From: Stegostoma tigrinum
Lineage: Eukaryota
Length of the DNA: 64,000 bases
Assembly: GCF_030684315.1 (NCBI RefSeq)
Contig: NC_081396.1
Location: forward strand, 5,518,001-5,582,000
Direction of reading: 5' to 3'
Below are positions 13,620-64,000 of the stretch, one piece after another. Within the stretch, counting starts at the first letter, position 1. Each line of letters begins with the position of its first letter. Under the pieces are notes generated by a model that had not been told where the DNA came from, did no database searches, and saw only the letters and a program-made list of their open reading frames with translations. Position numbers and translations under genes: made by a program.

Positions 13620-14010
13620 GGTCAGAATGGACACTTGAGGCTTGTCCATGAGAGGTTATCAGAGGAAACGTCCATTTGATTGAAACATACAAACTTTCAG
13701 GCGTTTTCATCCCATGTACATGGAAAGAATGTTCTCTCTTGTTGGTGAACCTTGAACTCAGAATCCCAGCTTGATGATGCAGAGTCGAACATTTAAGACA
13801 GAGATAAAGACCACTTTTTTTTTCAAACACAAGGCAGTGATATTTGGATATTTTAAGGCAGAGTGAGATACATTCCTGATCCTTTAAAACAAAAAGCACG
13901 AGTAGAATGTGGAGTAAATGCGAAACTGAAGAAGTCCGATTAGTGTTGCTTGTTTTGAATTGCTGAGCAGACTTGAGGAGCTGACTCGTGCTGTTAAGCT
14001 GTGACTTCAT
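13620..14010 (+). mobile_element. Decayed CR1-like LINE 3' fragment
   Basis: Remnants of the LIETYK-type ORF2 C-terminal coding sequence and a 3' UTR-like sequence. Confidence 0.45.
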
Positions 14011-14456: not shown

Positions 14457-14918
14457 ATGGGACTCGTTCTTATCTTCACATTGTGTGCCTATTTACACCG
14501 TAAGTAGAAATCAGGCAACTTAACATTGCCGGCATTTTGTATAAAGCTCCCCGTGTCCATTAAAACAGCAGGCGTTGTATCTTGTCAAGGTCACTTCAAG
14601 CCCATTAATGTATCTCTCTTTAATTTCCAGGATCTTTCAGTCAGTCAGTGGTACAGACGCCGCCAGCAGTAACCACAAAAGAGTGTCAGTCTCTCAACAT
14701 CGACTGTGTTTTCTATGGTGGTTTCTACCGTCGTCCTTTAACTGAAGGGACTTTCTTCAAACAACGCCAGGCTGGATCAGAGCGGGAGCGGGTCTCGGCA
14801 GGGGGGAGGTTTAATGTGAGGATAAATAAAGAAGAAAAGACATTTTCGCTGGAAATTCAGGATGTGAAAGTTGAAGACACCGCCACCTATTATTGCAAAG
14901 CAGAGTACCTTTACGATG
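14457..14918 (+). CDS. NAR-TCR (IgNAR-like) V segment: leader exon 14457-14499, V exon 14631-14918
   Basis: Leader MGLVLIFTLCAYLH, GT at 14500, AG at 14629-14630, in frame. V reads QSVVQTPPAVTTKECQSLNIDC...TFFKQRQAGSERERVSAGGRF...FSLEIQDVKVEDTATYYCKA. It has the IgNAR-like shortened FR2/CDR2 region (ERVSAGGRF) and an extra FR1 Cys at 14684-14686. Confidence 0.9.
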
Positions 14919-14956
14919 CACAATGATGGGGCTCAGCTTCCCGTGACACAAAAAAG
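14919..14956 (+). other. 22/23-class RSS (CACAATG-22-ACAAAAAAG)
   Basis: Follows the NAR V. The best nonamer sits at a 22-nt spacer. Confidence 0.85.
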
Positions 14957-15271
14957 CCCTGTCTGTCCATTATCACAGAAACAGGGTAAAATCCCAACCC
15001 TATCTGCCCTGAACACCCCATACATTCACCTCTCAGTGCCACCTCCACAGTCCTGTTTATATTGGAACTGGAATGACACTGTTATTATCTTCAGTATTGT
15101 AAATGCTGAGTAGTCTGATGGTGATGTCTTTTGTGGGATCGTTGTCAGTGTATCAGTGTTGGAAACAACTGATCCCAGTCAGTAGTCACGGATACTGGAA
15201 GTAATCCATTTCTGAAACTGACAACTGGAGCCGCTGTTTAAACAAAGATTCCATACCTGAGTAATACCAGG

Positions 15272-15343
15272 AGATTTGGTGCTGACTGGAAACACTGTGT
15301 GAATTTTGGGACTTTCACAGTGAATCAGAGCTGATCAAGTAAC
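15272..15343 (+). other. D segment TGAATTTTGGGACTTT (15300-15315) flanked by two 12-RSS
   Basis: 5' side AGATTTGGT-12-CACTGTG (15272-15299). 3' side CACAGTG-12-TCAAGTAAC (15316-15343). Both heptamers are perfect, the nonamers are divergent. Confidence 0.85.
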
Positions 15344-15653: not shown

Positions 15654-15692
15654 AGTTTTTGCATTGGTGTGTCTGAGAATGGTGTCACTGTG
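15654..15692 (-). other. J-associated 23-RSS (AGTTTTTGC-23-CACTGTG)
   Basis: Exact 23-nt spacer, perfect heptamer, near-consensus nonamer. Confidence 0.92.
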
Positions 15693-15745
15693 TTGGAAGA
15701 GCGCCACTGCAGATGGGTCCGGGACAGAAGTGACTGTTACAGCTG
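15693..15745 (+). CDS. NAR-TCR J segment (WKSATADGSGTEVTVTA)
   Basis: The G-x-G-T-x-V-T-V motif has Asp at the usual Phe/Trp position. A phase-1 GTAAG donor follows at 15746. Confidence 0.9.
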
Positions 15746-18179: not shown

Positions 18180-20355
18180 AAGTATTTGCAAAGAGCACGG
18201 AGCACAATGTGAAGAAAGATCAGCAGCCCTGATATTCCTCAATTTTTTGGTCCTATTTAAGGGGGGTATGGCCTCAGTTGTTCAGTTTTTTATACACTTT
18301 TGCACCATCAGCTTTGATTTGTTTTTGTACCACTGAATAAAGGGTTGAGCAGACTTAAAAATCATTTAGAAAGTTTAACAGTTTCCTCTCGAAATTCGGG
18401 CAGTACGAAGAGGCTCCATAGAAATCCTTGAACTTGGGCTGAAGGCCGAATGATATCAATGTGATGAGATTGCTTCTTCCATACGTCGCTCTGGAATAAA
18501 GCGCTGTACAATACATGTCAGCACTGACACAACAGACAGAAATATTCGGAGGAATGCATTTCTACACAAAAAGATCAGAATGTGGAGCTGCTTAAAATTG
18601 GGCCAAGTGTCTCCATGCGGTGATGGAAATCGTTTCAAAATAGAGAAGGGAAAGTGGAAGAAAATAGAAGGAAACGGGAATGAGGTATAAATGTGTCGGT
18701 TGCCATTCGGAATGGAGGAGGCATTTGCAGAGTACAAGAATAGGTGCAGACAATTGCACCCAATGGACTGTACCTGATCTGCAGATTCCAAAACTTGCAA
18801 ATCTGAGAAAACACTTTGCCAGAAAACATAGATGACAGTTGATCAATCCACCAAGGGACTTGAAATTGTCAGCCACCCAGAGAACCCAGCTCTTCGTGGT
18901 GGTGAAACCACAATGTAAATTGCAGTGGCTGAGCCCAAACGCGAATTGTGAGGCTTTGGGACAAATTCACAAGATGGAAAATAACAAATAAATATCATAA
19001 AGTGAGAGGTATAGATTTTGAAACGAAAATACTTCAAAAATGCTCAGGAACGTGAAATAAGCGAGATTGCCTCCATGATTTATTTAAAAAACGCAAAGGT
19101 AGACTGGACCCACAGTGTGGCCATACAAAATTCTCGCACCAGTGCATAAAATAGTATAAGTATCATGAGCGGTCACAATATAATGCATACAGTTTCGTTA
19201 CTTTTATAAAAAGGGACATTGAGGGCAAAATTCAAAGAACTTGTATAAATCCTTAGAACGTGCTTTGGCTCCAGCGAGAATATTTTTTTCAGGTTGGGGC
19301 CAAAGTGAAGACATGAAAGAGCATGCAGAATCCACAAGAATGATTTCACGACCCGGACAAGTCGGAGAGAGAGAGTTGAGTTGAAGAAGTTGGGATTATT
19401 TTTCTTCAAGAATGGAAGTTTGATTTAAAAATAAATGGGCTCAGCATAAAGAATAATGCTGCAAAGGAACGGCAGCTGAGCCCCTTTAAGCTTCTACTGA
19501 TACCTTTTGCCTTTCCGTACTAAAACTGCCTTCAAACACAGGATCTGTATCCCTTTATTTCCTTCCTATTCATGTATTTGTTCAGGTGCTTCTTCAATTC
19601 TGCTGTTATGACTGCTTAAACCATCTCCTCTGGCAGCGAAATCCAGGCATTCTCCACCCTTTGTGTGAAAAACTTGCCTCGCATATCTTCCTAAAGCTCT
19701 CAACCAACTGCCCACGCACACCCCTTCACCCCGGGGCCATCAACTTGTAACCCCTCGTAATTAATATTTTCACTCTGCGAAAAAAGCCACATACTTTCCA
19801 CTCTATCCATGCTATTCATCATCTTAAAAAATCGTCTGTGAATTCACACCATTTCTTTCTACGTGGCAATGAAAACAAACCCACCCAACCAAACTTTCTA
19901 CATAGCTGATATCCCCCATATGAGGCAACAACTTGGTCAACAGTTTGTATATCCGCTCCAAAGAGTTCACATCCTTACTACTTGATGGCCGTATTCAAAA
20001 TCATGAGGAGTCAGAACAGAGCAGATAAAGTGAAACTGTCGCCATTGATGGAAATGTCGGGAACCAAAATGTACTCAGGAACAGAACTGAAAATGGCGAC
20101 TTCAGAAAAAGTAGTTTCAAGGTGAATGATTTTGATCCCGCATGCATTTCCAGATCATAACAGTTTTGCATGGAAAGGCAAACTCGATCAAGGTGTTCAA
20201 GAGGAAATTGGATATTGCTTTGGAATGAAGACTGTTTAAGGCTGCTGGGAGAGAGTAGGAAATGGTAGTCAATGAATTCCTCATTCAGAAAGGCAGCATG
20301 AACATGCCAGGCTGAATAACCTTCTTCTGTGTTGTTACTGTTCTTTGACTCTATT
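18180..20355. mobile_element. Cluster of heavily decayed CR1-like fragments in both orientations
   Basis: Plus-strand RT remnants, a minus-strand 3' fragment at about 19470-19990 (ctttgtgtgaaaaacttgcc) and a plus-strand tail near 20340. Confidence 0.45.
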
Positions 20356-20957
20356 CCCTGATATTCTGAAGTAGCACCCATCCAGGTCAATTACTGCGGA
20401 TGAGTTTTATGACGATTTGTTGGAACTTAGTGTGGTAACACAGCAGAGGTTTTCATAGGTCCAACAATTCTGGAAGCTGGCCATCTTAGTGAGGAGGAGA
20501 AAAACCGATTGAAATATTTTCCCAGATGCACATTTCACCAGAAATACACAAAAAGGCTTTAATAAAATCGATGGAAGCAGACAGCACATCCGGTTATCAT
20601 ACTGTCTGTGGTGCAGGTGCAGGTACTTAGAAAAAGCAACAAGTTTGTTTTCCGATTCTGTGACTTGTGCCTGTTCCCATGGGGATCATTCCCTGTTGCA
20701 GTGCGTTTCCAATACCGGTTTGACTGTAAGTCTAGATTCTGAACTCTCCGAACCCATGCTGGCATTTCAGCCAAATCACTGCAACTCCATGTCAACAACA
20801 AGAAATTGCAACATTTCAATGTTATTTCGTTAATTATGACAAAGACAATTCCAACACCAAGTCAAATTAAGAAAAGTATCTTCATATCAGAAGTGTCTAC
20901 ATGATTGCCAAGTTTCTGCCATAATCAGTGCGAAAAATCTTTTATTTTATTCCACAG

Positions 20958-21267
20958 ATTCCCCATCCCTTGTGTCCCGCAGCCCAGCTGTACAAAGCTC
21001 TGTTACCGGAGACACTGTTACTTTCAGCTGTGAATATTCAGGATTCTGTCGTTACACAGTTTCCTGGTACACGCAGTCCCCAGGAGGGGGTCTGAAATAT
21101 TTGCTTCAGAGCGACACATCAGGAGGTCAGAATGAAGAAATTGCAGCGGGAGGCAGAATTTCTGCTGCTGTTGACTCCTCGACAAAAATCAGTCGATTAA
21201 AAATCTCCACAATACAACTGAGTGACTCTGCTGTGTATTACTGTGCACTGGGTCGGCACACAGCACA
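20958..21267 (+). CDS. Leaderless supporting TCR-delta V segment of NAR-TCR
   Basis: Acceptor ttttattccacAG at 20956-20957 is in phase with the J donor (G|AT = Asp). It reads DSPSLVSRSP...FSCEYSGFCRYTVSWYTQ...SDSAVYYCALG, with canonical Cys/Trp plus an extra CDR1 Cys at 21047-21049. No leader exon was found upstream. Confidence 0.88.
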
Positions 21268-21654
21268 CACAGTGATCGAGAACACGGTCAGAGCAGTACA
21301 AAAACAGAATGGGAATTGTACACAAAATGATACAGAGCATGGAGACAGCTGTAAAATCACATGAACATACTGGCGATTATGGCAGTTATTCAGAGCACAG
21401 CGAAAGCTGTACAAAACCCTGAACAGAATGGGAATCATAGAGAAAATTATGCAGAGCATGTACAAACACATAAATACGCTGGCGATTGGAACACAGTAAC
21501 ACAGAGCACGGAGACAGCTGTACAAAAACCTGACCAGAGTGGGAATTGCAGACAAAATTATACAGGACACGGACAGAGTTGTATAAAAACATGAACATGC
21601 CACAGACTACAACGCCGTAATAAAGAGCATTGATGAAAGAGCCATACAAAAGCC
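21268..21654 (+). repeat. Tandem array of ~7 23-RSS-derived units; first unit is the V's own RSS (CACAGTG-23-ACAAAAACA)
   Basis: Heptamer positions are 21268, 21323, 21381, 21442, 21492, 21553 and 21613, with related spacers and nonamers. The unit at 21492-21530 is CACAGTA-23-ACAAAAACC. Confidence 0.85.
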
Positions 21655-22226
21655 GTCACCGACTGAGGATTACAGATACTGCAATGCAAACAGCAGAGAC
21701 AACAGTACGGAAATAAAAATGCGTGCAGTGCTTTGCAGATGTGTGATGCGGGAAATTTGGGAACCAGATCTGCACAATGTCAATGGCACTAACTGTTTGG
21801 GAATCCAATATATACATCGAAAACGTGTTTTGTTTCAATGAATACATTTGGTATTTTGTGAAACTTGAATTCAATTATCCTTTACTGAAATTTTGAACAC
21901 TGTTATTGGAAAATTGGTCCACGAGACAGATGATTTGTTCTTGTATTTTACACAGGGGGGTGGAAGGAGAAAGCAGATACAATGAGCACATGGAAAATTT
22001 CGCCACGTAAACATATGGGCTAATCAAATGGAGCCCTGGAAAAGCAGAAATAATCATGGGGCTAATTGTATTTAAACTTCAGACATAAGGGATATTGACA
22101 ATGCGACAGATGCATGAATATTTGATTTTAAATTTTTATTTCAGTTTTCGTGTCTAAGAATAAACCTCAGTCGAATTGCAGTTGGACAAATACAATCAAA
22201 GAAGCTTTTTTACATAAAAGCATCTA

Positions 22227-23217
22227 GAACATAGAACATAGAACAGTAGAGCATAGAACAGGCCCTTCAGCCCACGATGTTGTGCCGACCATTGATCCTC
22301 ATGTATGCACCCTCAAATTTCTGTGACCATACGCATGTCCAGCAGTCTCTTAAATGACTCCAATGACCTTGCTTCCACAACTGCTGCTGGCAACGCATTC
22401 CATGCTCTCACAACTCTCTGCGTAAAGAACGTGCCTCTGACATCCCCTCTATACTTTCCTCCAACCAGCTGAAAACTATGACCCATCGTGTTAGCCATTT
22501 CTGCCCTGGGAAATAGTCTCTGGCTATCAACTCTATCTATGCCTCTCATTATCCTGTATACCTCAATTAGGTCCCCTCGCCTCCTCCTTTTCTCCAATGA
22601 AAAAAGTCCGAGCTCAGTCAACCTCTCTTTATATGATAAGCCCTCCAGTCCAGGCAGCATCCTGGTAAACCTCCTCTGAACCCTCTCCAAAGCATCCACA
22701 TCTTTCCTATAATAGGGCGCCCAGAACTGGATGCAGTATTCCAAGTGCGGTCTAACCAAAGTTTTATAGAGCTGCAACAAGATCTCACGACTCTTAAACT
22801 CAATCCCCCTGTTAATGAAAGCCAAAACACCATATGCTTTCTTAACAACCCTGTCCACTTGGGTGGCCATTTTAAGGGATCTATGTATCTGCACACCAAG
22901 ATCCCTCTGTTCCTCCACACTGCCAAGAATCCTATCCTTAATCCTGTACTCAGCTATCAAATTCGACCTTCCAAAATGCATCACCTCGCATTTATCCAGG
23001 TTGAACTCCATCTGCCACCTCTCAGCCCATCTCTGCATAGTGTCAATGTCCCGCTGCAGCCTACAACAGCCCTCTATACTGTCAACGACATCTCCAACCT
23101 TTGTGTCGTCTGCAAACTTGCTGACCCATCCTTCAATCCCCTCATCCAAGTCATTAATAAAAATTACAAACAGTAGAGGCCCAAGGACAGAGCCCTGTGG
23201 AACACCACTCACCACAA
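22227..23217 (-). mobile_element. Young 5'-truncated CR1 LINE
   Basis: Uninterrupted ORF with SGVPQGSVLGPLLF and KFADD RT motifs, a (tagaaca)n tail, and a candidate TSD catcta at 22221-22226 and 23218-23223. Confidence 0.95.
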
Positions 23218-26200
23218 CATCTACAAAGTGTTTCTCACTGCTCACATGGACGTCCAGTGAAAACAACAGATTCAATTGAGCTGAGCTTCAGTCGTCAATA
23301 ATTAATCATTTCTAATTGCCACTTTAATGCATCATGGAAGCAATATTGTTCCATCAAAGGTGTTGATGTTTCAACTTCGCCTCAGTTTCAATTTTCAAGT
23401 TGATTTTATTTTATCTAATTCTATGTCTGCAACTACTGTGGCTTGTTTCAGTTTTAATGCCACCGTGAGAACTTGCCCTACCACTCGGAATTTTCAGTTA
23501 GTTTCAGTTTGTGTATATTCTGCTGTGGTTTTACTGTTACTTACTGGGAAGAGCATCTACTGTGCCCTGGCAACTTAAATTTCCTACAACCAATTGCTTT
23601 ATTTGGCCGCATGTTCCCTGAGCCGCTGAGTTTTACATTATGTAAAATATATAGGTCAGGGTTAATCAGCTGTCAAATTGGAGAATGCCAGTCATGTATA
23701 CTCTACACTGGCCTGTCACCCCTCTCACAACAATAAACCCTTTCCACAAAGCACTTTTTTCTTCTGTTCCTTTGTCCCTCCTGCAATATTTCTGCTCCTG
23801 ATAGCTGCATCAAATCCAACAGTTCCATGCTCTAAATCTATCAATGAGCCCTATACACTAAATCAATCCTGTTAAAAAAATTTCCTTTTTCCTGCCATTA
23901 TCAACAAAATAAAACTTTACCCCAACACATCTTTGAACTCATTCATTATGTGAAATATTTCAATGAAGTCTTCTCTTCATTCCACCTGTTTCAGTGGAAC
24001 GTGGACCAGTTTGCATTCACTCTTCAGATCAGTCTGCATTCTTACTGATCTCTTTTTCTTTCAAGCAGAGAGGCCAGTCATAGTTTGGAAGATGCGAACG
24101 TTAGAAACATAAACACACCAGACATTCCACCTAAAACCCTACTCCCTACTCTGAAGCACAAACATGTTAATTTATTATACATTCGTGGGTGCGTGAATCA
24201 TTAGCTAGGCCTGCAGTTTCTATCGACCACAAATTGCTGTGGACTCGGAAGTCGGGGAACAACCTACTTCAGTCACAGCAGACGGCAAGAGTAAGAACAC
24301 CTACAATTCTGGTGAAAAGAGACTTCCAGAATTTTGGCTCACAGTAAGTGTGGGAATTGTTTCAGCGAGTCTAAGTTTTCATGATTTATTTGTAATAATT
24401 AGTTGCTACTTATACTGAGGAAATATTCGCAATCTCCTGCTCTTGTTCTCGGAACTAACGCCCCCACGAATAAATTACCGGTATCAACATGGATTAATTG
24501 TTCAAGAAATAAAGATATGAGGAATAAAGTTTATACGTGGTGCAGGTAGAATAGACTGAAAAGATGTATTCCCTTGCTTGAGACGTTAGTGAAACAGGTG
24601 CATTGTTTGAAAAGTTATCGATCAAACATTGAGAGGAAAGAACAGAATGTTTTTAAGCTGGGCCCAGTGTGTGTTCTGGAACTCGCTGGCTGAAATGACA
24701 GCAGAGACATCAGCCTTGAACCCGCTTAGCAAAGGGGCATACAACATAAATCTTTAAAACTCATGTTTATTTCAAAAGGAAATGGAATTAAGGCAATGCT
24801 GGGAAATTTAATTTCGTTTGATGGCTCTTTTCTCAGTCAGCGATGGTCAGAGTGGTTTATGTTTTGCTTTGAAATTGTCGATATTTTATAACTGCTCTAT
24901 ATGTCAAAACATTCCAACGCTCTCTGATACAGGGGTTTCATGTTATGCACATTGCTGCTGAGTGGAGCTGGAATGCATAAAGTGTTTCTTCTGTGCTGCA
25001 CTTGTCATTCAGATATTGTTGATAATGGCATTAGCTTCTGCTTGGTTTAGTGCCTTGACAAAATTTATGACTTCGATGGAAATCTGCAAGTGTTTCATTT
25101 GGCATCAACCATCATTGTATTAGCACGTGATCAATTATTAAATACCTCTACTTGGTCAGAGATTGCTGCACACTTCAGGAACAGGGAGCACTTGAACTAG
25201 GCTGTGCAGGATGACAGTCGACAAAGAACTCTTGGCTTCTTGTGAAGAGTAACAGTGATTACGACACACAAGACACTCTCTGAAACAAGTGACTATCTCA
25301 ATTGCTTCGTCACTCGCTCATCTTTTTGCTTATATTACTCTGCACATTCGTATTTCTTAGTGCTTGATCACAGTACACAGTAAACCAGACAAACAGTCTG
25401 GTTGTGTTGCACAAAGCAATGGCATTGTTCCTATTTCAAATGACTTGGCCTCGATTATTGTTCCACTCAACCCGACTTGTGATTATGTTACGCCAGGTCG
25501 TTTCTCTGTTTATATTGCAATATGCTATGCGGGTATGAATATTCGGTTTGATAAAGTGCCTTTGTATTTTTGATTAGAATCAATCTCAGCTGCTTCCAAA
25601 CTGTATGATGTACTATTCTGTGTTGCCCTGAGCATGTCTGCTTTACTGATGGGCTACGATAAACATGCCTTCTGATTATTTTTCATGATTAGCTCAGCGT
25701 AAAACAGTGGGCTCCATTATGTCTCTAATTGCACAACCCTGTGTTTTTGATTTGAGTAGGCACTTTGCGAATCTCCACAGTTCACCATGTTTGTTTTCAT
25801 GTTGCACTGTGCACTTCGTTAGTTTTTTGCTGCAAGTCGTCATCTACTGTTAATGCCACCTGCCAGCTTACAATTTTCAATGTTACATTTATCTTGTCGC
25901 CATTACATGTGCATTTGATGCTACAGATCTAAGCCATACATCATATATGAAGTCATGTAATAAAAACACTCTTTACACTGCATCGGGCATTTGTAAACTA
26001 TAATTCCATCTAATATTATTGTGCAGACTCAACCATTTGCTGCCCCTTCCTACACGTATTGTTTAGCAGAAACTCAAACAGATCTGCAGTTCCTCTTGGT
26101 ACAGAATTTGCTTTCATTATTCTCATTTCGTAGACCCAACTGCGTGTTGAATCATCATTTCAAAATGGATATGATTTTAATGTATTGAAATACTGACGTG

Positions 26201-27980: not shown

Positions 27981-30900
27981 TCTCTCTTGTCCTCTTACTT
28001 TCTCTTTCTTTCTCTCCCTTTTTATTTCTTTCTTCTCGCTTACTTGCTTTCTCATTTTTGTTCTTTCTCTCTTTCTTTGTTTCTTGCTTCCTTCATTTAT
28101 TCCTTTTGTTCTTCTTCTCTTTCTTTCACTCTTTATTTCTTTTTTCTTTCTTGCTCAAACTCACACGTGCTCTCATTTTAAAAATCTCACTCACACGTGC
28201 AATCACTCTGTCAAAATCATCAGATTCATTATAAATGCTTTCATTCCCAGCATTTCTCATACACACATACACTCTGTCACACAATTTTTTTTCACACACT
28301 AGCATGCTTTCACTCACGCACTGACACTGTCAAATCTGAGTTTCGGACATACTCTTACTCACCGATATAATCACAGAAAACGACGGGAAAATGTTTCAAC
28401 CTATAGTTTTCATTCTCTGGAAGAACGATCGCAATATTCCCACTCTGATCTCCTCTTCATACGAAGCACTTTACAGGCTTCTGGGCATAATATTGTGCTG
28501 ATAGCCTTCAAATTATGAACCAACTCCCATTTCAATTGGTTTAACTTGCTACATTCTCCCATCTCTTCCCTTTCTTTTTGTTTCACTTGTTACGATCACT
28601 GTCGCTTTGTCCTGTCTCCCCTCCCCCGACTCTTGTGTGACTGTATTCCCTTTCCAGACTCGCAGTGAGACAAACCATTCTTCTACCATTCTCACATAGC
28701 AACCAATTAATCTAAAGTATGAACATCTTCTCTCTCAAGCATTCTTCACCCCCCGCAACTACAAGTCCCCAAACTATAGCATTAATGTTGACCCCTTCCA
28801 GACTTCACTTCAGCTCTGATGAGGTGCCATGGGTACTAAAGCTTTATGTAGTCCCTTCTGTGGCGATGGTTTCTGTCTCGCTGTAATCTCAAGCATGTGT
28901 TGTTTCCCTGTCGATTTCTACGTCGCTTTTCAAACGAGACGTTCAACTCATGGAACCTACTCTCCTCTTGAACATCTTAACTCATGCTTTATCGAGATAT
29001 TATCAAATTATTATTGATTTGGTGCTCGTTTTGTGCTCGATATTCACCACAATTCGTTTATCCAGGACAAGAACCACGTATCAAAGATTTCACTGATGTT
29101 GAAACTGCTATAAGGCTCATAACTATCAATGTCGCCACCACTGTGTATCACGAGAAAGTGTATAGCAAACAACATTGCAGACGACTCAGGCCGTAGTTGC
29201 TGTTGTTATTATTATCAATAATCATGATAATAATAATAATCATCATCATCATACTTTCAAATTGTTTTAGCATATGCTTCAGTTGTACCTGTCAACAGCT
29301 GACACTGTACCTTTATATTGATGCTATGAGGCAATCAATGTGGCAGAATCTCTCCATAACAGGATGAAATCCTGTGAGATGACCATTAGTAGAATAATAG
29401 ATTTCCTTCGCATTTCCAACTCTGGGTTGCTTGCAAAGTCCTCACTGCTCTGACTATGCAGATTTTTGCAGGCTCAGTTGGTCACCAAATTATGTATAAT
29501 AGTTCAAGAATTGGTCGAGAGAATGAGGGCAAATGGAATTACAGGATTTAGAACGTGATGAAGGAACTCTACTGAACACAAAACAAGAGGCTCGACAATT
29601 TCAATTGTTCCACCACAAAATCAAGGAATGTTCTCCAACCAATCCTCATCCATTAACATAAAATCCCAGAAAATGGTTTTGATACAGTTCAGTAGAGTCA
29701 CTGTAGCCAGAAGTACATCTGCTGTTTTCATAGTGCATGATTTACAGTTCAGCTTTTGACAAAAAAAGTCCACAAGTGTAACAAACGTGAAAGCAACAGT
29801 CAACAATACAGAGCAATAAGTGACGACGTAAATGAAAGCAGTGACTACTAGCTGGATGCCGTGGCACAAATCAAGGAACCGGAAACGTAAATGGCACACA
29901 CAACCATATTTATCCAATAAAGTCTTCTGCTGGCGTTTGCGAGTTCTTCTTCATTGGACCACATGGACTGCAGCAGTTTTAGAAGGCGCTACCACATCCA
30001 CGTGTGGTGTCAATATATGGTGGTCATGTTATCGACGGTAACATCACATGAATGAACCACATCAGAGCAGGTTTCAGAACAGTTTCATTGACTGGTGTCT
30101 CTAGGTTAGCATTATGACCTCAGCCCAATTGCCTCCTCCTGCTCTTTAACGGGAGAAGAGAATGATTCTTCTGATTTTTGTTCATCCATTCTGTTTACTT
30201 TAGACATAAACTGTGAGACACAATTTGCCTGCTCCTTTTTAAAATTCCAAGTGTGAATGCCTGTGGGATTGATTTGTATCAGACTTGAAAACTATGTCTT
30301 TATATGATTCCGATTACATAATTTTAACATTTCTGTGTAACAAGTGGCTGAAGTGACACCAGCCTGGGCGAATGCCTGCCTAAAAGAGGTGATGTATCAG
30401 AGAGAAATGTTATAATCTGGGGACGCGGACAGAAGCAAATCTGGCTCAGATGAATTTTCTAGACACAAGGTGCATCCAAGGAACCGGAATCCTGCAGGAA
30501 AAAAAATCTTGAAATCTCTCCAAATTAAAAATAATTCTAAATTATGAAAGATCAGAATCGGAAATAAATGATAACTTTTCATCTTTTCAATCAACGATCA
30601 TTTTATTGTTAATTGAAAAATAACAAGAAGCATTTTTGGTAAAATCACATTTGAAAATAGCCAGGAGTGGTGTTCCCTCGCCCTGTGCCATGACAACTTT
30701 TTCTACTATCTTCCAAAAACTATCAGCTGAAACCATATCGTTGAAATGCATTCTGCAATGTGATCTATTGTCAAATTGGATTTCCAAAACGTAGTACCAC
30801 TATTTGTCTCTAACAGAATCTGATGTATAATTTGGAATTTACGGCGAAGGATGAAGAATCTATTGATTTCTCGTAAAACGTTCATGGCTCTGCTCTATGT

Positions 30901-36516: not shown

Positions 36517-36826
36517 GTTCCAGTTCCCTGGTATCCTGGAGTCGGCCCCTACAAACCACGGCTACCAGGGACTTAGTAACTTTAAGTTATGAATATCCAG
36601 GGACCTGTCAATACACAGTTTACTGGTACAGTCAGTCCCGAGGACAGGCTCCAAAATATTTGCTTGGGAGACAGACTCCAGCAGAGCAGAATAAATAAAA
36701 TGCTGCTGGAAAAATAATTTCTGCTTCTATTGATCCTGCGGAAAACATCTGTTGGTTAATGATCTCTCAAAAGTAACCAATTGTCTCCGTTTTGTATTAT
36801 GGTGCATTGAGTTGGCCCTCAGCCGA
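36517..36826 (+). pseudogene. Pseudogenised supporting TCR-delta V (paralog of 20958-21267)
   Basis: Reads SSSLVSWSRPLQ...LSYEYPGTCQYTVYWYSQ...QNK*NAAGKIISASID...QK*...YYGAL. It has two stops, Cys23>Tyr, Cys104>Gly and the acceptor AG changed to TG, but the CDR1 Cys is kept. Confidence 0.85.
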
Positions 36827-37037
36827 CATAGTGATACAGAGCGTGGAGCAAGCTGCACCAAAACATGAACACGGTCGAGATCACAGGCACAGTGATACAG
36901 AGCATGGAAAGAGCTGTACATAAACCTGAATGTGATACAATTGAAGACAGAGTGATACAGGGCATAGAAACAGCTGTACAAATATCTGGACATAGTAGGT
37001 TTACAGATGCAGGGACATAGAGAACGGTACAAATGTT
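36827..37037 (+). repeat. Tandem array of 3-4 23-RSS-derived units
   Basis: CATAGTG-23-ACCAAAACA (36827), CACAGTG-23-ACATAAACC (36888), CAGAGTG-23-ACAAATATC (36948) and a truncated unit at 37008. Confidence 0.85.
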
Positions 37038-58928: not shown

Positions 58929-58967
58929 CACAGTGTCACCAACAGTTGAAGGGTCCACACAAAAACC
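58929..58967 (+). other. Perfect consensus 23-RSS (CACAGTG-23-ACAAAAACC)
   Basis: Direct inspection. Confidence 0.97.
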
Positions 58968-60173
58968 TGCAGAGTGGCAGTTCTGTTATGTTACTTTTGA
59001 CATAACACTGTTACTAATTAAGGTTTGTAAAAACCGTGTTTGCGGGGAATGAGGGTAAAATACAACAGAAAATATGGAGAATCAAAATTTAAAGATGGTC
59101 AGAAGTGATTAAAATTGGAGATGCCAAAGAGATGTAGGATCGGTATATTTGCAAATGAGCAGCATTTGAGGAAGAAACAGAAAGTGGAGAAATACACTAT
59201 TACTACTTTCAGAGAACAGAATGTGAAAAACTATTCAAAGAGAAATGCATGAAAGTGAAAACCTACGGATTATGATGCACAGAAATTAAAGCTCTGTTCA
59301 AATCATAAATAAATGAAACATGAATAAAATATGAAAGCCTTTCCTTAACATGGTTCATATTTCCATCATAGTTAAAGGATTTAATCGTCAAAATAACGAT
59401 TCCTGAAAACTCATCTCCTGATAATGTCTCACCCATAAGTAGTTATTCGTGGTGCACATTGCCTGGCGATTCCGCCAGAGAATGCTGTAATCACCCACAA
59501 TTAAACAGTCTATATCAGCTTCTTGTAGTCTCTTTGAGTCATCCTCACGACTTGCCTTGCCACTTCTTTTTCTGTCGTTTGTAAACTTGGCCATACTACG
59601 TTCGCTTCGGTCAGAACATGAATGTATTGTGCATGTGTGTCTGCCCTCTGAACGCAGCAGTCCAAGCAGCATCAGAAGAGCACGAAAGCTGAAGTTTCAT
59701 TTCTCGACCCTGATTCAAGAAATTTTCCGAATCTTTTCATGTCTCTGAACAAAAACATTTTCAGCTTCGACCATCTCTGCTGACATTCACCGTGATCTCT
59801 TTGCAAGCATGTCGCCAAGAGTTCTGTGTTTATTCTTTCTGGTAGCAGGTTTTCCAACTGGTAAGTTCGGACCTAGTGGATCTTTATGCTTCAGGTGTTT
59901 GCGCAGATTGAATTTAAACGAACAGCTCAATGAATGTAGAGTGAAGAATGCATCCTCCCCGTATTGAAATAATAATCTGGACCCAGACTTGGCCCGACAC
60001 CTAGCACAATGTGAGAGAAGTTAGGAACATCCAAGAGTGAGAAATAGTGGATCAGTTCTGCTGGGAATCCAAACAGGAAGGAGGATATTGAAATGATTTA
60101 ACGGAGAGACAAGTTTTAAAAACCATAGGACTGTGCGCAGATTTTCCTTCAAGTCGCAGGAGATGAAATGGGA

Positions 60174-62210: not shown

Positions 62211-62683
62211 ATGTACTCCCCGGCTTTTTTACTGATAACAACTATTGTGCTATTCAGTGAGACTTAATCAAAATTATCATCCTGTGTTTCACTGATTACA
62301 TTTGGTTGCATATCTTTGACACATTCGTCTTATTTATTGCAGAAGAAAAATGGTCAAGATTCTTCTTTGCAGGACCCGCCTGAATGATTCGTTTAGAATG
62401 GACAGACCGATGTATTTAATTGCTGTTAAACATACAGTGTACCAAGTTCCTTCTGATACATCCAGTGCTCCAGGAAAGCTCTGAAGTATTTACTGAGGAA
62501 AATCGACTAGGAACATGTTGATAAGTCTCCTCACTTCTCAGATCGGTATTCCACTAATTTGAATGAAGAAGAGAAAATGGTTCTTGCAAAAGTCAACTGC
62601 ACTCTTGGATCTGACTCTACCATTCATTACTGTGCATTCAGCTCCACATGGATTTAGAGGAGTAATCCGCCTTTACAAAAATC
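62211..62683 (+). pseudogene. TCR V pseudogene (leader 62211-62256, V exon ~62343-62644, RSS CACATGG-23-ACAAAAATC at 62645-62683)
   Basis: Leader MYSPAFLLITTIVLF with a GT donor. V reads QDSSLQDPPE*...FNCC*...F*YIQ...ALKYLLR...DSTIHYCAFS with multiple stops. Confidence 0.85.
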
Positions 62684-63502: not shown

Positions 63503-64000
63503 ATGTCAGCTGTTACATTTTATACATTAACCACAGCTGCGGTTCTCTTCGCTGGTAAGTTCATTAAGTCGCAAAACATTGACTTGTACATGCCATTTAC
63601 GTAGTGAACTCACCTGCATAATGTTCACTTATCTTGATGACATTATCGAACAAAACGATAATTTCAGACTCAGATTGATTTTATGTTTAATTTTCTGTAG
63701 ATGTGAATTCGATCTCACAGCAGCCAGCTACAGCAAAACAGCTTGAAGGACTGTCGGTGAACATTAACTTTAGCTATTCGATGGAAACAGCTGTCTCATA
63801 TTCCTTACAATTGTACCGGCAAGACCTGAGTAAATCACCAACATTATTGCTCTACATCCTTCAATACGGAACCGTTCACAGATCTGACGGCGTGGGAAAT
63901 CGATTTTCTGCAGCTCTGGACACTTCGAAAAGTGAGGGGAATTTCACCATTGGTGACCTACGACTGTCTGACAGCGCTGTGTATTACTGCGTGTTGAGAG
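63503..64000 (+). CDS. TCR V segment, paralog of the 732 V (leader 63503-63554, V exon from 63701, cut by window end); also Cys23>Phe, Trp41>Leu
   Basis: Leader MSAVTFYTLTTAAVLFA with intact GT/AG. V reads NSISQQP...NINFSYS...LQLYRQ...DSAVYYCVLR in an open frame. Confidence 0.9.

What the first reader, a model, noticed from the sequence alone, without database searches (positions are those of the whole stretch)
21268..21654. Tandem array of recombination signal sequences behind the NAR-TCR supporting V
Seen in sequence: instead of one RSS, the V is followed by ~7 units of 50-61 bp. Each is heptamer-like + spacer + nonamer-like, and five keep an exact 23-nt spacer. The linkers alternate (cagaatgggaat-type and ctggcgatt-type), giving an AB dimer higher-order repeat. 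Unit 5 (21492-21530, CACAGTA-23-ACAAAAACC) has a perfect nonamer. Most other units lost the essential CAC but kept nonamer-like ends. Established: V segments normally carry a single RSS, RAG1 binds the nonamer, and cleavage needs CAC. Inference: the array could load RAG onto a V that has no promoter of its own, act as a decoy limiting NAR-TCR usage, or allow staged rearrangement. In the staged model a first join at unit 5 would be non-productive (stop at 21362-21364) but leaves the V-proximal RSS free for a second join. I do not know of a description of this structure.
Basis: partly seen in the sequence, partly recalled or inferred. Interest (0 to 1): 0.85.

Follow-up and report, generated by a model that had tools for sequence, protein, structure and literature searches.

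The report
Decaying tandem copies of a V-segment RSS
Behind a shark NAR-TCR "supporting" V gene segment, the recombination signal has been copied head-to-tail about seven times; the array is real and seems undescribed, but its pattern of decay looks like a neutral minisatellite, not a selected device.

Summary
The leaderless supporting V exon (20958-21267) of a complete NAR-TCR cassette is followed by seven homologous units of 50-63 nt (21268-21671). Each unit is heptamer-like, spacer, nonamer-like and linker. Self-similarity is 22 sd above shuffles. Short contigs (unitigs) built from reads of what is probably the source sample cover most of the array without a difference, and read depth shows it is low-copy. 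Only U1 (CACAGTG-23-ACAAAAACA) and U5 (CACAGTA-23-ACAAAAACC) keep the essential CAC in register.

A second, three-unit array follows an orphan pseudo-supporting V at 36827-37001, so the structure is inherited within this V family. Other V segments in the window have one RSS.

The functional readings are not supported. In downstream units the heptamer (0.70) and nonamer (0.75) match the consensus no better than the spacer (0.82) or linker (0.72). The B-type units share one derived dead heptamer. Two units have spacer indels. A U5-like survivor is expected under neutral decay.

Best reading: a degenerate tandem repeat born from duplication of the RSS plus its flank. U5 is a plausible occasional alternative RAG site whose joins would carry a stop codon.

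No RNA or thymus data and no other shark genomes could be reached. The scan's first readers noted similar arrays at two other places in this genome; I could not check them.

The parts
14457..14499 (+). NAR-TCR leader exon (ATG at 14457, GT donor at 14500)
   Evidence: Read directly. This is context for the finding.
14631..14918 (+). NAR-TCR V exon, with a Cys in the a-b loop (TKECQS) and FFKQ in place of WYRK. Its RSS follows: CACAATG at 14919, a 22-nt spacer, then ACAAAAAAG.
   Evidence: Pfam V-set E 5.7e-10. Defining features taken from PMC1845163.
15655..15745 (+). NAR-TCR J. Its RSS (nonamer, 23-nt spacer, CACTGTG) is at 15655-15692. The J coding part is at 15693-15745 (..ADGSGTEVTVTA) and ends in phase 1 before GTAAGT.
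   Evidence: Minus-strand RSS hit; sequence; translation.
20958..21267 (+). Leaderless supporting delta-type V exon. The acceptor AG is at 20956-7 in phase 1, matching the J donor. It has an extra Cys in CDR1 (CEYSGFCRY) and ends ..YYCALGRHTAH.
   Evidence: Pfam V-set E 1.4e-13.
21268..21317 (+). Unit 1, the V's own 23-RSS: CACAGTG-23-ACAAAAACA (21268-21306), followed by an A-type linker.
   Evidence: nhmmer E 5e-9.
21318..21378 (+). Unit 2 (B-type). Heptamer-equivalent CAAAATG, 23-nt spacer, nonamer-equivalent 5/9. It contains the in-frame stop at 21362-21364.
   Evidence: nhmmer E 1.6e-14.
21379..21435 (+). Unit 3 (A-type). GGCAGTT-23-ACAAAACCC; CAC lost.
   Evidence: nhmmer E 9e-14.
21436..21487 (+). 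Unit 4 (B-type). GAAAATT; spacer cut to 13 nt by a deletion; ACAAACACA.
   Evidence: nhmmer E 1.2e-7.
21488..21547 (+). Unit 5 (A-type). A near-consensus 23-RSS, CACAGTA-23-ACAAAAACC, at 21492-21530. It is the only downstream unit predicted to be cleavable by RAG.
   Evidence: nhmmer E 4.5e-15, the best hit.
21548..21608 (+). Unit 6 (B-type). CAAAATT-23-ATAAAAACA; CAC lost.
   Evidence: nhmmer E 1.5e-11.
21609..21671 (+). Unit 7 (diverged A-type). CGCCGTA; 26-nt spacer from a 3-nt insertion; ACAAAAGCC.
   Evidence: nhmmer E 6.5e-9.
36520..36826 (+). Orphan pseudo-supporting V. It has in-frame stops, Cys23 changed to Tyr and YYC changed to YYG, but keeps the CDR1 Cys. It is 69.7% identical in DNA to the V at 20958-21267. 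No NAR V lies upstream.
36823..37001 (+). Second array of three units: CATAGTG-23-ACCAAAACA (36827, dead), CACAGTG-23-ACATAAACC (36888, intact) and CAGAGTG-23-ACAAATATC (36948, dead).
   Evidence: nhmmer E 3e-14 to 3e-13.

Best explanation
The array is a degenerate, minisatellite-like tandem repeat. It arose when the V segment's 23-RSS and about 15-25 nt of downstream flank were duplicated head-to-tail. It was then amplified, largely as a two-unit (A+B, about 111-119 nt) block, probably by unequal crossing-over or replication slippage.

It arose in an ancestor of this supporting-V family and was inherited by paralogs with different unit numbers: seven here, three behind the pseudo-V at 36.8 kb. 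Since then it has drifted without selection for RAG recognition.

U1, next to the V, is the working RSS. U5 happens to have stayed near consensus, and being next to an actively rearranging V it may be cut by RAG now and then. Such joins would keep 224 nt of germline DNA, including U1 and a stop codon, and would be non-productive.

What is shown: the repeat structure, its inheritance, and the lack of differential conservation. What is inferred: the amplification mechanism, the neutrality, and any use of U5.
For: - Ten homologous units in two arrays, and nowhere else in the window.
- Self-similarity 22 sd above shuffles.
- Low copy and supported by reads.
- In downstream units, leave-one-out match to consensus is 0.70 for the heptamer, 0.82 for the spacer, 0.75 for the nonamer and 0.72 for the linker. 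The nonamer is no better than random column sets (P=0.74) and the heptamer is, if anything, worse.
- U2, U4 and U6 share the same derived heptamer replacement ([CG]A[CG]AAAAT[GT]). The block was therefore copied after CAC was lost.
- Spacer indels of -10 nt in U4 and +3 nt in U7.
- Only 1 of 6 downstream units keeps CAC, against 2-3.7 expected under simple neutral decay. At least one U5-like unit is expected with P 0.13-0.79 for per-site divergence of 0.15-0.25.
- The same kind of array sits behind a dead, orphan V.
- Units differ by 25-48%, about as much as the two V exons differ (30%).
Against: - U5 is the unit closest to all the others, including those of array 2. It has a perfect nonamer and CAC. 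That could reflect purifying selection, but the margins are within sampling error for units of about 55 sites.
- In array 2 it is again a downstream unit (36888) that keeps a perfect heptamer, while the V-proximal one is dead.
- Only two arrays and ten units were available. One array belongs to a pseudogene, and the units are not independent, so the conservation test has little power.
- No rearrangement data exist for this species here.
Confidence: 0.65

Rival explanations
1. A selected recombination device. The repeated nonamers would concentrate RAG1 on a promoterless V. Alternatively U5 would act as a decoy or as a first step in staged rearrangement: a join at U5, then rescue from U1.
For: - Two near-consensus 23-RSSs in the same orientation, 224 nt apart.
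- Nonamer-like ends scoring 7-9 of 9 in five of six downstream units.
- An array also behind a paralog, and unchecked notes of similar arrays elsewhere in this genome.
- Alternative RSSs near gene segments are used in mouse and human TCR loci (PMC6857471).
Against: - The nonamer and heptamer are no better conserved than the spacer or linker.
- CAC is lost in five of six downstream units, and one dead heptamer was itself amplified.
- Spacer length is broken in two units.
- A join at U5 carries a stop codon (21362-21364).
- A pseudogene keeps an equally good array.
- Inheritance alone explains the recurrence.
Confidence: 0.12
2. A repeated binding site for a factor other than RAG, for example a reiterated E-box that opens chromatin for the second rearrangement of a V with no promoter of its own. 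On this view the conserved part would be the spacer, not the RSS motifs.
For: The spacer is the best-conserved segment (0.82). The blocks ATACAGAGCA and AGCTGTACAAA are the most constant columns. CAGCTG is present in U2, U5 and unit 3 of array 2.
Against: - CAGCTG is intact in only 3 of 10 units.
- The excess conservation of the spacer is not significant.
- The spacer ends resemble those of ordinary RSSs (my own recollection of standard substrate sequences, not tested here).
- The array behind a dead V is equally preserved.
Confidence: 0.08
3. The array was built by germline RAG activity, through repeated reinsertion of signal ends or episomes or through aberrant joins, which cartilaginous fishes are known to have undergone. 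This is a rival account of origin only, against slippage or unequal crossing-over.
For: Germline-joined antigen-receptor genes in sharks show that RAG has acted in the germline (established knowledge; compare note s1-881506). The repeated object is itself an RSS.
Against: - All units are in direct orientation and each carries a co-duplicated linker.
- They form a two-unit higher-order repeat, and dead units were copied. This is the signature of homology-driven amplification.
- Reinsertion would leave head-to-head heptamers, and none was found.
Confidence: 0.08
4. An assembly artefact, or a copy of a common interspersed repeat that resembles an RSS by chance.
For: Tandem Repeats Finder does not report the array. 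An N gap and LINE fragments lie nearby.
Against: Read-derived contigs cover 21289-22116 with no differences. Depth is that of single- or low-copy DNA. The unit profile finds no other copies in 64 kb. The first unit is the V's own RSS.
Confidence: 0.02

Closest known systems
Canonical 23-RSS of TCR alpha/delta V segments
   Same: U1 and U5 have a CAC-led heptamer, a 23-nt spacer and an A-rich nonamer. U1 abuts the V coding end as in any V segment.
   Different: Here the signal is reiterated seven times in tandem with linkers, and most copies are dead. The other V segments in the same window have one RSS.
Alternative or cryptic RSSs next to TCR gene segments that cause germline DNA retention in coding joints (PMC6857471)
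   Same: U5 is a near-consensus extra RSS close to the canonical one. Using it would leave the canonical RSS and germline DNA in the joint.
   Different: The known cases are single fortuitous sites, demonstrated by repertoire sequencing. Here the extra site is a homologous copy inside a repeat array, and its use is not shown.
Minisatellites and higher-order tandem repeats
   Same: Units of 50-63 nt, a two-unit higher-order period, different unit numbers between paralogs, purine-rich strand asymmetry (A 41%, T 17%), and mutated units that were themselves amplified.
   Different: The seed sequence is a functional recombination signal at the edge of a gene segment. The units are old and diverged (55-75% identity), not homogenised.
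NAR-TcR doubly rearranging locus (Criscitiello et al. 2006, as summarised in PMC1845163 and PMC12227049)
   Same: A leader and NAR V, then D and J, spliced to a leaderless delta V with a CDR1 Cys that must itself rearrange.
   Different: No description of multiple RSSs behind the supporting V was found in the papers that could be read. The primary shark papers were not held.

Membership tests
NAR-TcR cassette (the context of the array) | N-terminal NAR-type V with its own leader, a Cys in the a-b loop, and no Trp in the WYRK motif | tested here: met
   Leader at 14457-14499. The V reads ..TKECQSLNIDC..GTFFKQRQ... Pfam V-set. Criteria from PMC1845163.
NAR-TcR cassette (the context of the array) | Associated delta V lacks a leader, is entered by splicing from the NAR J, and has a conserved Cys in CDR1 | tested here: met
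   The J ends in phase 1 at 15745 before GTAAGT. The acceptor AG is at 20956-7 and the exon starts in phase 1. CDR1 reads CEYSGFCRY.
Functional 23-RSS | Heptamer beginning CAC, directly at the coding border | tested here: met
   Met by U1 (21268) and by U5 (21492, where the 'coding' flank is array DNA). Not met by U2, U3, U4, U6 and U7. The CAC requirement is as stated in PMC12711392 (abstract).
Functional 23-RSS | Spacer of 23 +/- 1 nt and an A-rich nonamer close to ACAAAAACC | tested here: met
   U1 scores 23 nt and 8/9; U5 scores 23 nt and 9/9. U4 (13 nt) and U7 (26 nt) fail on spacer length.
Functional 23-RSS | Actually cleaved and joined by RAG in lymphocytes | not testable with these tools
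   No RNA or lymphoid DNA runs for this organism were found. Only contigs from one sample and sparse bisulfite reads could be laid.
Neutral tandem repeat (minisatellite-like) | Head-to-tail homologous units, significantly above chance | tested here: met
Neutral tandem repeat (minisatellite-like) | No excess conservation of the putatively functional motifs over the rest of the unit | tested here: met
   Heptamer 0.70, nonamer 0.75, spacer 0.82, linker 0.72. Power is low: ten non-independent units.
Neutral tandem repeat (minisatellite-like) | Unit-number variation between paralogs or individuals | tested here: inconclusive
   Seven against three units between the two paralogs. No length variant was seen within the one sample. 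Other individuals were not informative.

The most novel reading that the evidence does not exclude
The reiterated RSS is a selected trait of NAR-TCR supporting V segments. At least one downstream unit (U5 here, 36888 in the paralog) is kept competent. RAG therefore has two entry points on a V that has no promoter. This would give either a decoy that throttles NAR-TCR assembly or a two-step pathway: a non-productive join at U5, then rescue from U1 to a further D. That would be a new way of regulating V usage through the architecture of the signal itself.
Probability: 0.1. Interest if true: 0.8.

Novelty: new variant of a known kind. Interest (0 to 1): 0.4.

Why it matters
V segments are taught to carry one RSS. 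A V family that carries an inherited tandem array of RSS copies, two of them near consensus, is a natural experiment. It bears on how RAG chooses among adjacent signals and on how RSSs decay once they are released from selection.

If U5 is used, the NAR-TCR supporting V would be a built-in case of alternative-RSS cleavage with germline retention.

If the array is neutral, as the evidence here suggests, it is mainly an annotation caveat. Automated RSS finders will call extra "RSSs" behind these V segments. It is also a modest curiosity of shark TCR delta loci.

Tried and rejected
- Tandem Repeats Finder at minimum score 30 does not report the array because the units are too diverged. I relied on the repeat finder, MAFFT and nhmmer instead.
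- Fetching paralogs and orthologs failed.
- The sequencing-run search found only DNA runs from one sample plus bisulfite runs, and no RNA. Laying the reads confirmed the sequence but could not show rearrangement joints. The listed joints have 21-40 nt sides into the high-copy repeat at 22225 or within the V, and I disregard them.
- A metagenome scan with the V protein returned 54 V-like loci at 25-41% identity (one short fragment at 83%), from unknown vertebrate hosts. They are not members of this V family and some could be human, so I did not read, compare or analyse them.
- I tried to establish unit-by-unit orthology between the two arrays. All registers score alike (0.62-0.66), so I rejected it.
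- Homology of the 3' flanks of the two arrays, and an eighth unit, are not above shuffles, so I rejected both.
- Rfam gave no match in 20000-23000.
- An RIC-type RSS information score was not computed because no model was available. I used simple consensus matching instead.
- The primary papers on NAR-TcR genomics (PMC1458790, PMC7909615, PMC7039070) are not held. Prior description therefore cannot be excluded. Full-text searches for tandem, duplicated or multiple RSS found none.

Full report
**Context**

The window is part of a cartilaginous-fish TCR alpha/delta-type locus. It contains a complete NAR-TCR cassette.
- A leader exon at 14457-14499.
- A NAR-type V exon at 14631-14918. It has a Cys in the a-b loop and FFKQ in place of WYRK, and is followed by an RSS at 14919.
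- A J at 15693-15745. It is preceded by nonamer, 23-nt spacer and CACTGTG at 15655-15692, and ends in phase 1 before GTAAGT.
- About 5.2 kb downstream, a V exon that starts straight after an acceptor AG (20956-7) in phase 1. It has no leader and carries an extra Cys in CDR1 (CEYSGFCRY).

Both V exons match Pfam V-set.

**The observation**

The supporting V ends at 21267. It is followed by CACAGTG-23-ACAAAAACA at 21268-21306. After that the same kind of sequence recurs.
- The repeat finder reports direct-repeat families of 44-82 nt at 61-80% identity, with spacings of 50-61 and 111-124 nt.
- A MAFFT alignment resolves seven units of 50, 61, 57, 52, 60, 61 and 63 nt from 21268 to 21671.
- Each unit has a heptamer-equivalent, a spacer-equivalent (23, 23, 23, 13, 23, 23 and 26 nt), a nonamer-equivalent (5-9 of 9 matches) and a linker.
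- The linkers alternate between a cagaatgggaat type (U1, U3, U5) and a ctggcgatt type (U2, U4). U6 and U7 have diverged.
- U5 is CACAGTA-23-ACAAAAACC at 21492-21530.
- The V reading frame runs into TGA at 21362-21364.

**Is it more than chance, and is it real DNA?**
- Summed local self-alignment of the region scores 255, against 102 +/- 6.8 for 500 dinucleotide shuffles. None of 297 random window segments reaches it.
- An nhmmer profile of the units hits only these seven places (E 5e-15 to 1e-7) and three more at 36824-37001. Nothing else in 64 kb falls below E 0.09.
- Contigs built independently from reads of what is probably the source sample cover 21289-22116 and 21327-21587 without a difference.
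- Depth over the array is 5-45, as in flanking unique DNA. The element starting at 22225 reaches depths above 200,000.

So this is neither a mis-assembly nor a common interspersed repeat. Tandem Repeats Finder misses it because the units are only 55-75% alike.

**A second array**

At 36520-36826 lies a paralog of the supporting V, 69.7% identical in DNA.
- It is dead: in-frame stops, Cys23 changed to Tyr, and YYC changed to YYG. It still has the CDR1 Cys.
- It has no NAR V upstream.
- It is followed by three units. The V-proximal one is CATAGTG-23-ACCAAAACA (dead). The second is CACAGTG-23-ACATAAACC (intact). The third is CAGAGTG-23-ACAAATATC (dead).

The other V segments in the window (ends near 1241, 58928 and 60690) have one RSS. 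The array is therefore a trait of this V family and predates the split of the two paralogs. First-stage notes report similar arrays 202 kb downstream and 3.48 Mb upstream in the same genome. I could not read those places.

**Is there selection on the RAG motifs?**

- In the eight downstream units of both arrays, the leave-one-out match to the consensus is 0.70 for the heptamer columns, 0.82 for the spacer, 0.75 for the nonamer and 0.72 for the linker.
- The nonamer is no better than random sets of nine columns (P=0.74). The heptamer tends to be worse.
- U2, U4 and U6 share the same derived replacement of the heptamer (CACAAAATG, GAGAAAATT, GACAAAATT). The two-unit block was therefore copied after that heptamer had already lost its function.
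- U4 has lost 10 nt of spacer and U7 has gained 3 nt.
- Only one of six downstream units keeps CAC, while simple neutral decay from a canonical ancestor predicts two to nearly four.
- The chance that at least one of six units still looks like U5 (CAC, heptamer at least 6/7, nonamer 9/9) is 0.13-0.56 for per-site divergence of 0.15-0.25. It is 0.45-0.91 if 8/9 in the nonamer is accepted.
- An equally good array sits behind a pseudogene.

The test has limits. There are ten short, non-independent units and one array is on a dead gene, so weak selection on U5 alone cannot be excluded. U5 is in fact the unit nearest to all the others, but the margin is within sampling error.

**Origin**

All units are in direct orientation. 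Each carries its linker, they form a two-unit higher-order period, and the + strand is purine-rich (A 41%, T 17%). The two paralogs differ in unit number. This is how minisatellites behave under unequal crossing-over or slippage.

No head-to-head heptamer pairs, as signal-end reinsertion would leave, were found. Unit-by-unit orthology between the arrays cannot be established because all registers score alike. The apparent homology of the 3' flanks is not above shuffles.

**How it most likely works**

U1 is the V's working 23-RSS. The remaining units are relics.

U5 satisfies the sequence rules for a 23-RSS (CAC, 23 nt, perfect nonamer). It lies 224 nt from a signal that must be accessible when this V rearranges. 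Occasional cleavage there is plausible by analogy with alternative RSSs that leave germline DNA in mouse and human TCR coding joints (PMC6857471). Such a join would contain U1 and a stop codon and would be non-productive.

Rescue from U1 to a further D with a free 12-RSS is conceivable, but it offers no advantage over using U1 first. I put 0.65 on the neutral-relic reading and 0.12 on a selected RAG-related role. Smaller shares go to a non-RAG regulatory repeat, a germline-RAG origin and an artefact.

**Novelty and limits**

Full-text searches for tandem, duplicated, multiple or second RSSs, and for NAR-TCR with RSS, found no description of such arrays. However, the primary nurse-shark papers are not held.

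The protein database held one chimaera relative only.

A metagenome scan returned 54 V-like loci from unknown vertebrate hosts. All but one short fragment are distant. I left them unread because they are not family members and some might be human.

**Verdict**

The functional interpretation is unsupported and, as far as this window can tell, contradicted by the pattern of decay.

Noticed in passing
window 21229-21245 vs 21492-21508 (also 1208-1233 and 63967-63992, minus strand): The heptamer plus the first 10 nt of spacer of the units (CACAGT[AG]A[TC]ACAGAGCA) is close to the reverse complement of the V's own FR3 end, TGCTGTGTATTACTGTG (15/17; the repeat finder I1). The unit profile gives weak minus-strand hits at the YYC ends of three different V segments (E 0.8-5). 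It may be no more than the known cryptic heptamer in FR3 plus chance.
   Followed up: partly
window 58929-59008: An ordinary V with a leader has a perfect RSS (CACAGTG-23-ACAAAAACC). Two bases after it comes a second RSS-like string, CAGAGTG-23-ACATAACAC (12/16). The background is about 1e-4 per position, so this may be a decayed duplicate RSS behind a V of another family.
   Followed up: partly
window 36520-36826: An orphan supporting-V pseudogene (stops, Cys23 to Tyr, YYC to YYG) with no NAR V, leader or J upstream within 14 kb. Homology to cassette 1 is limited to the V exon.
   Followed up: yes
window 15293-15322: Between the NAR V and NAR J lies CACTGTG, 16 nt, then CACAGTG. This looks like a D segment flanked by heptamers. 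A further CACAGTC / CACTGTT pair lies near 15047-15085. The nonamers were not checked.
   Followed up: no
window 22225-23287: A very high-copy element starts at 22225 (depth above 200,000 in read contigs). It overlaps a minus-strand ORF of 324 aa that looks like a reverse transcriptase from its motif (..GVPQGSVLGPLLF), so it is probably a LINE fragment about 550 nt downstream of the array. It was not searched against Pfam.
   Followed up: no
window 20970-21371: Read-contig depth is 2-4 times that of the flanks. Variant contigs occur: 21258 A>G, 21260 A>T and 21285 C>T on one; 21291 G>C, 21316 T>A, 21319 T>C and 21322 A>G on another. A close paralog or a divergent haplotype shares the V and the first two units. 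None of the seven differences falls in the U1 heptamer or nonamer.
   Followed up: partly
window 62457-62682: A weak V-like stretch (tblastn E 0.006 to the supporting V) is followed by CACATGG-23-ACAAAAATC at 62645. It is probably another V remnant with its RSS.
   Followed up: no
window 13859-13897 and 29729-29767: Two isolated RSS-like strings that were not linked to any V. CAGAGTG-23-ACAAAAAGC (14/16) lies about 600 nt upstream of the NAR-TCR leader. CATAGTG-23-ACAAAAAAA scores 13/16.
   Followed up: no
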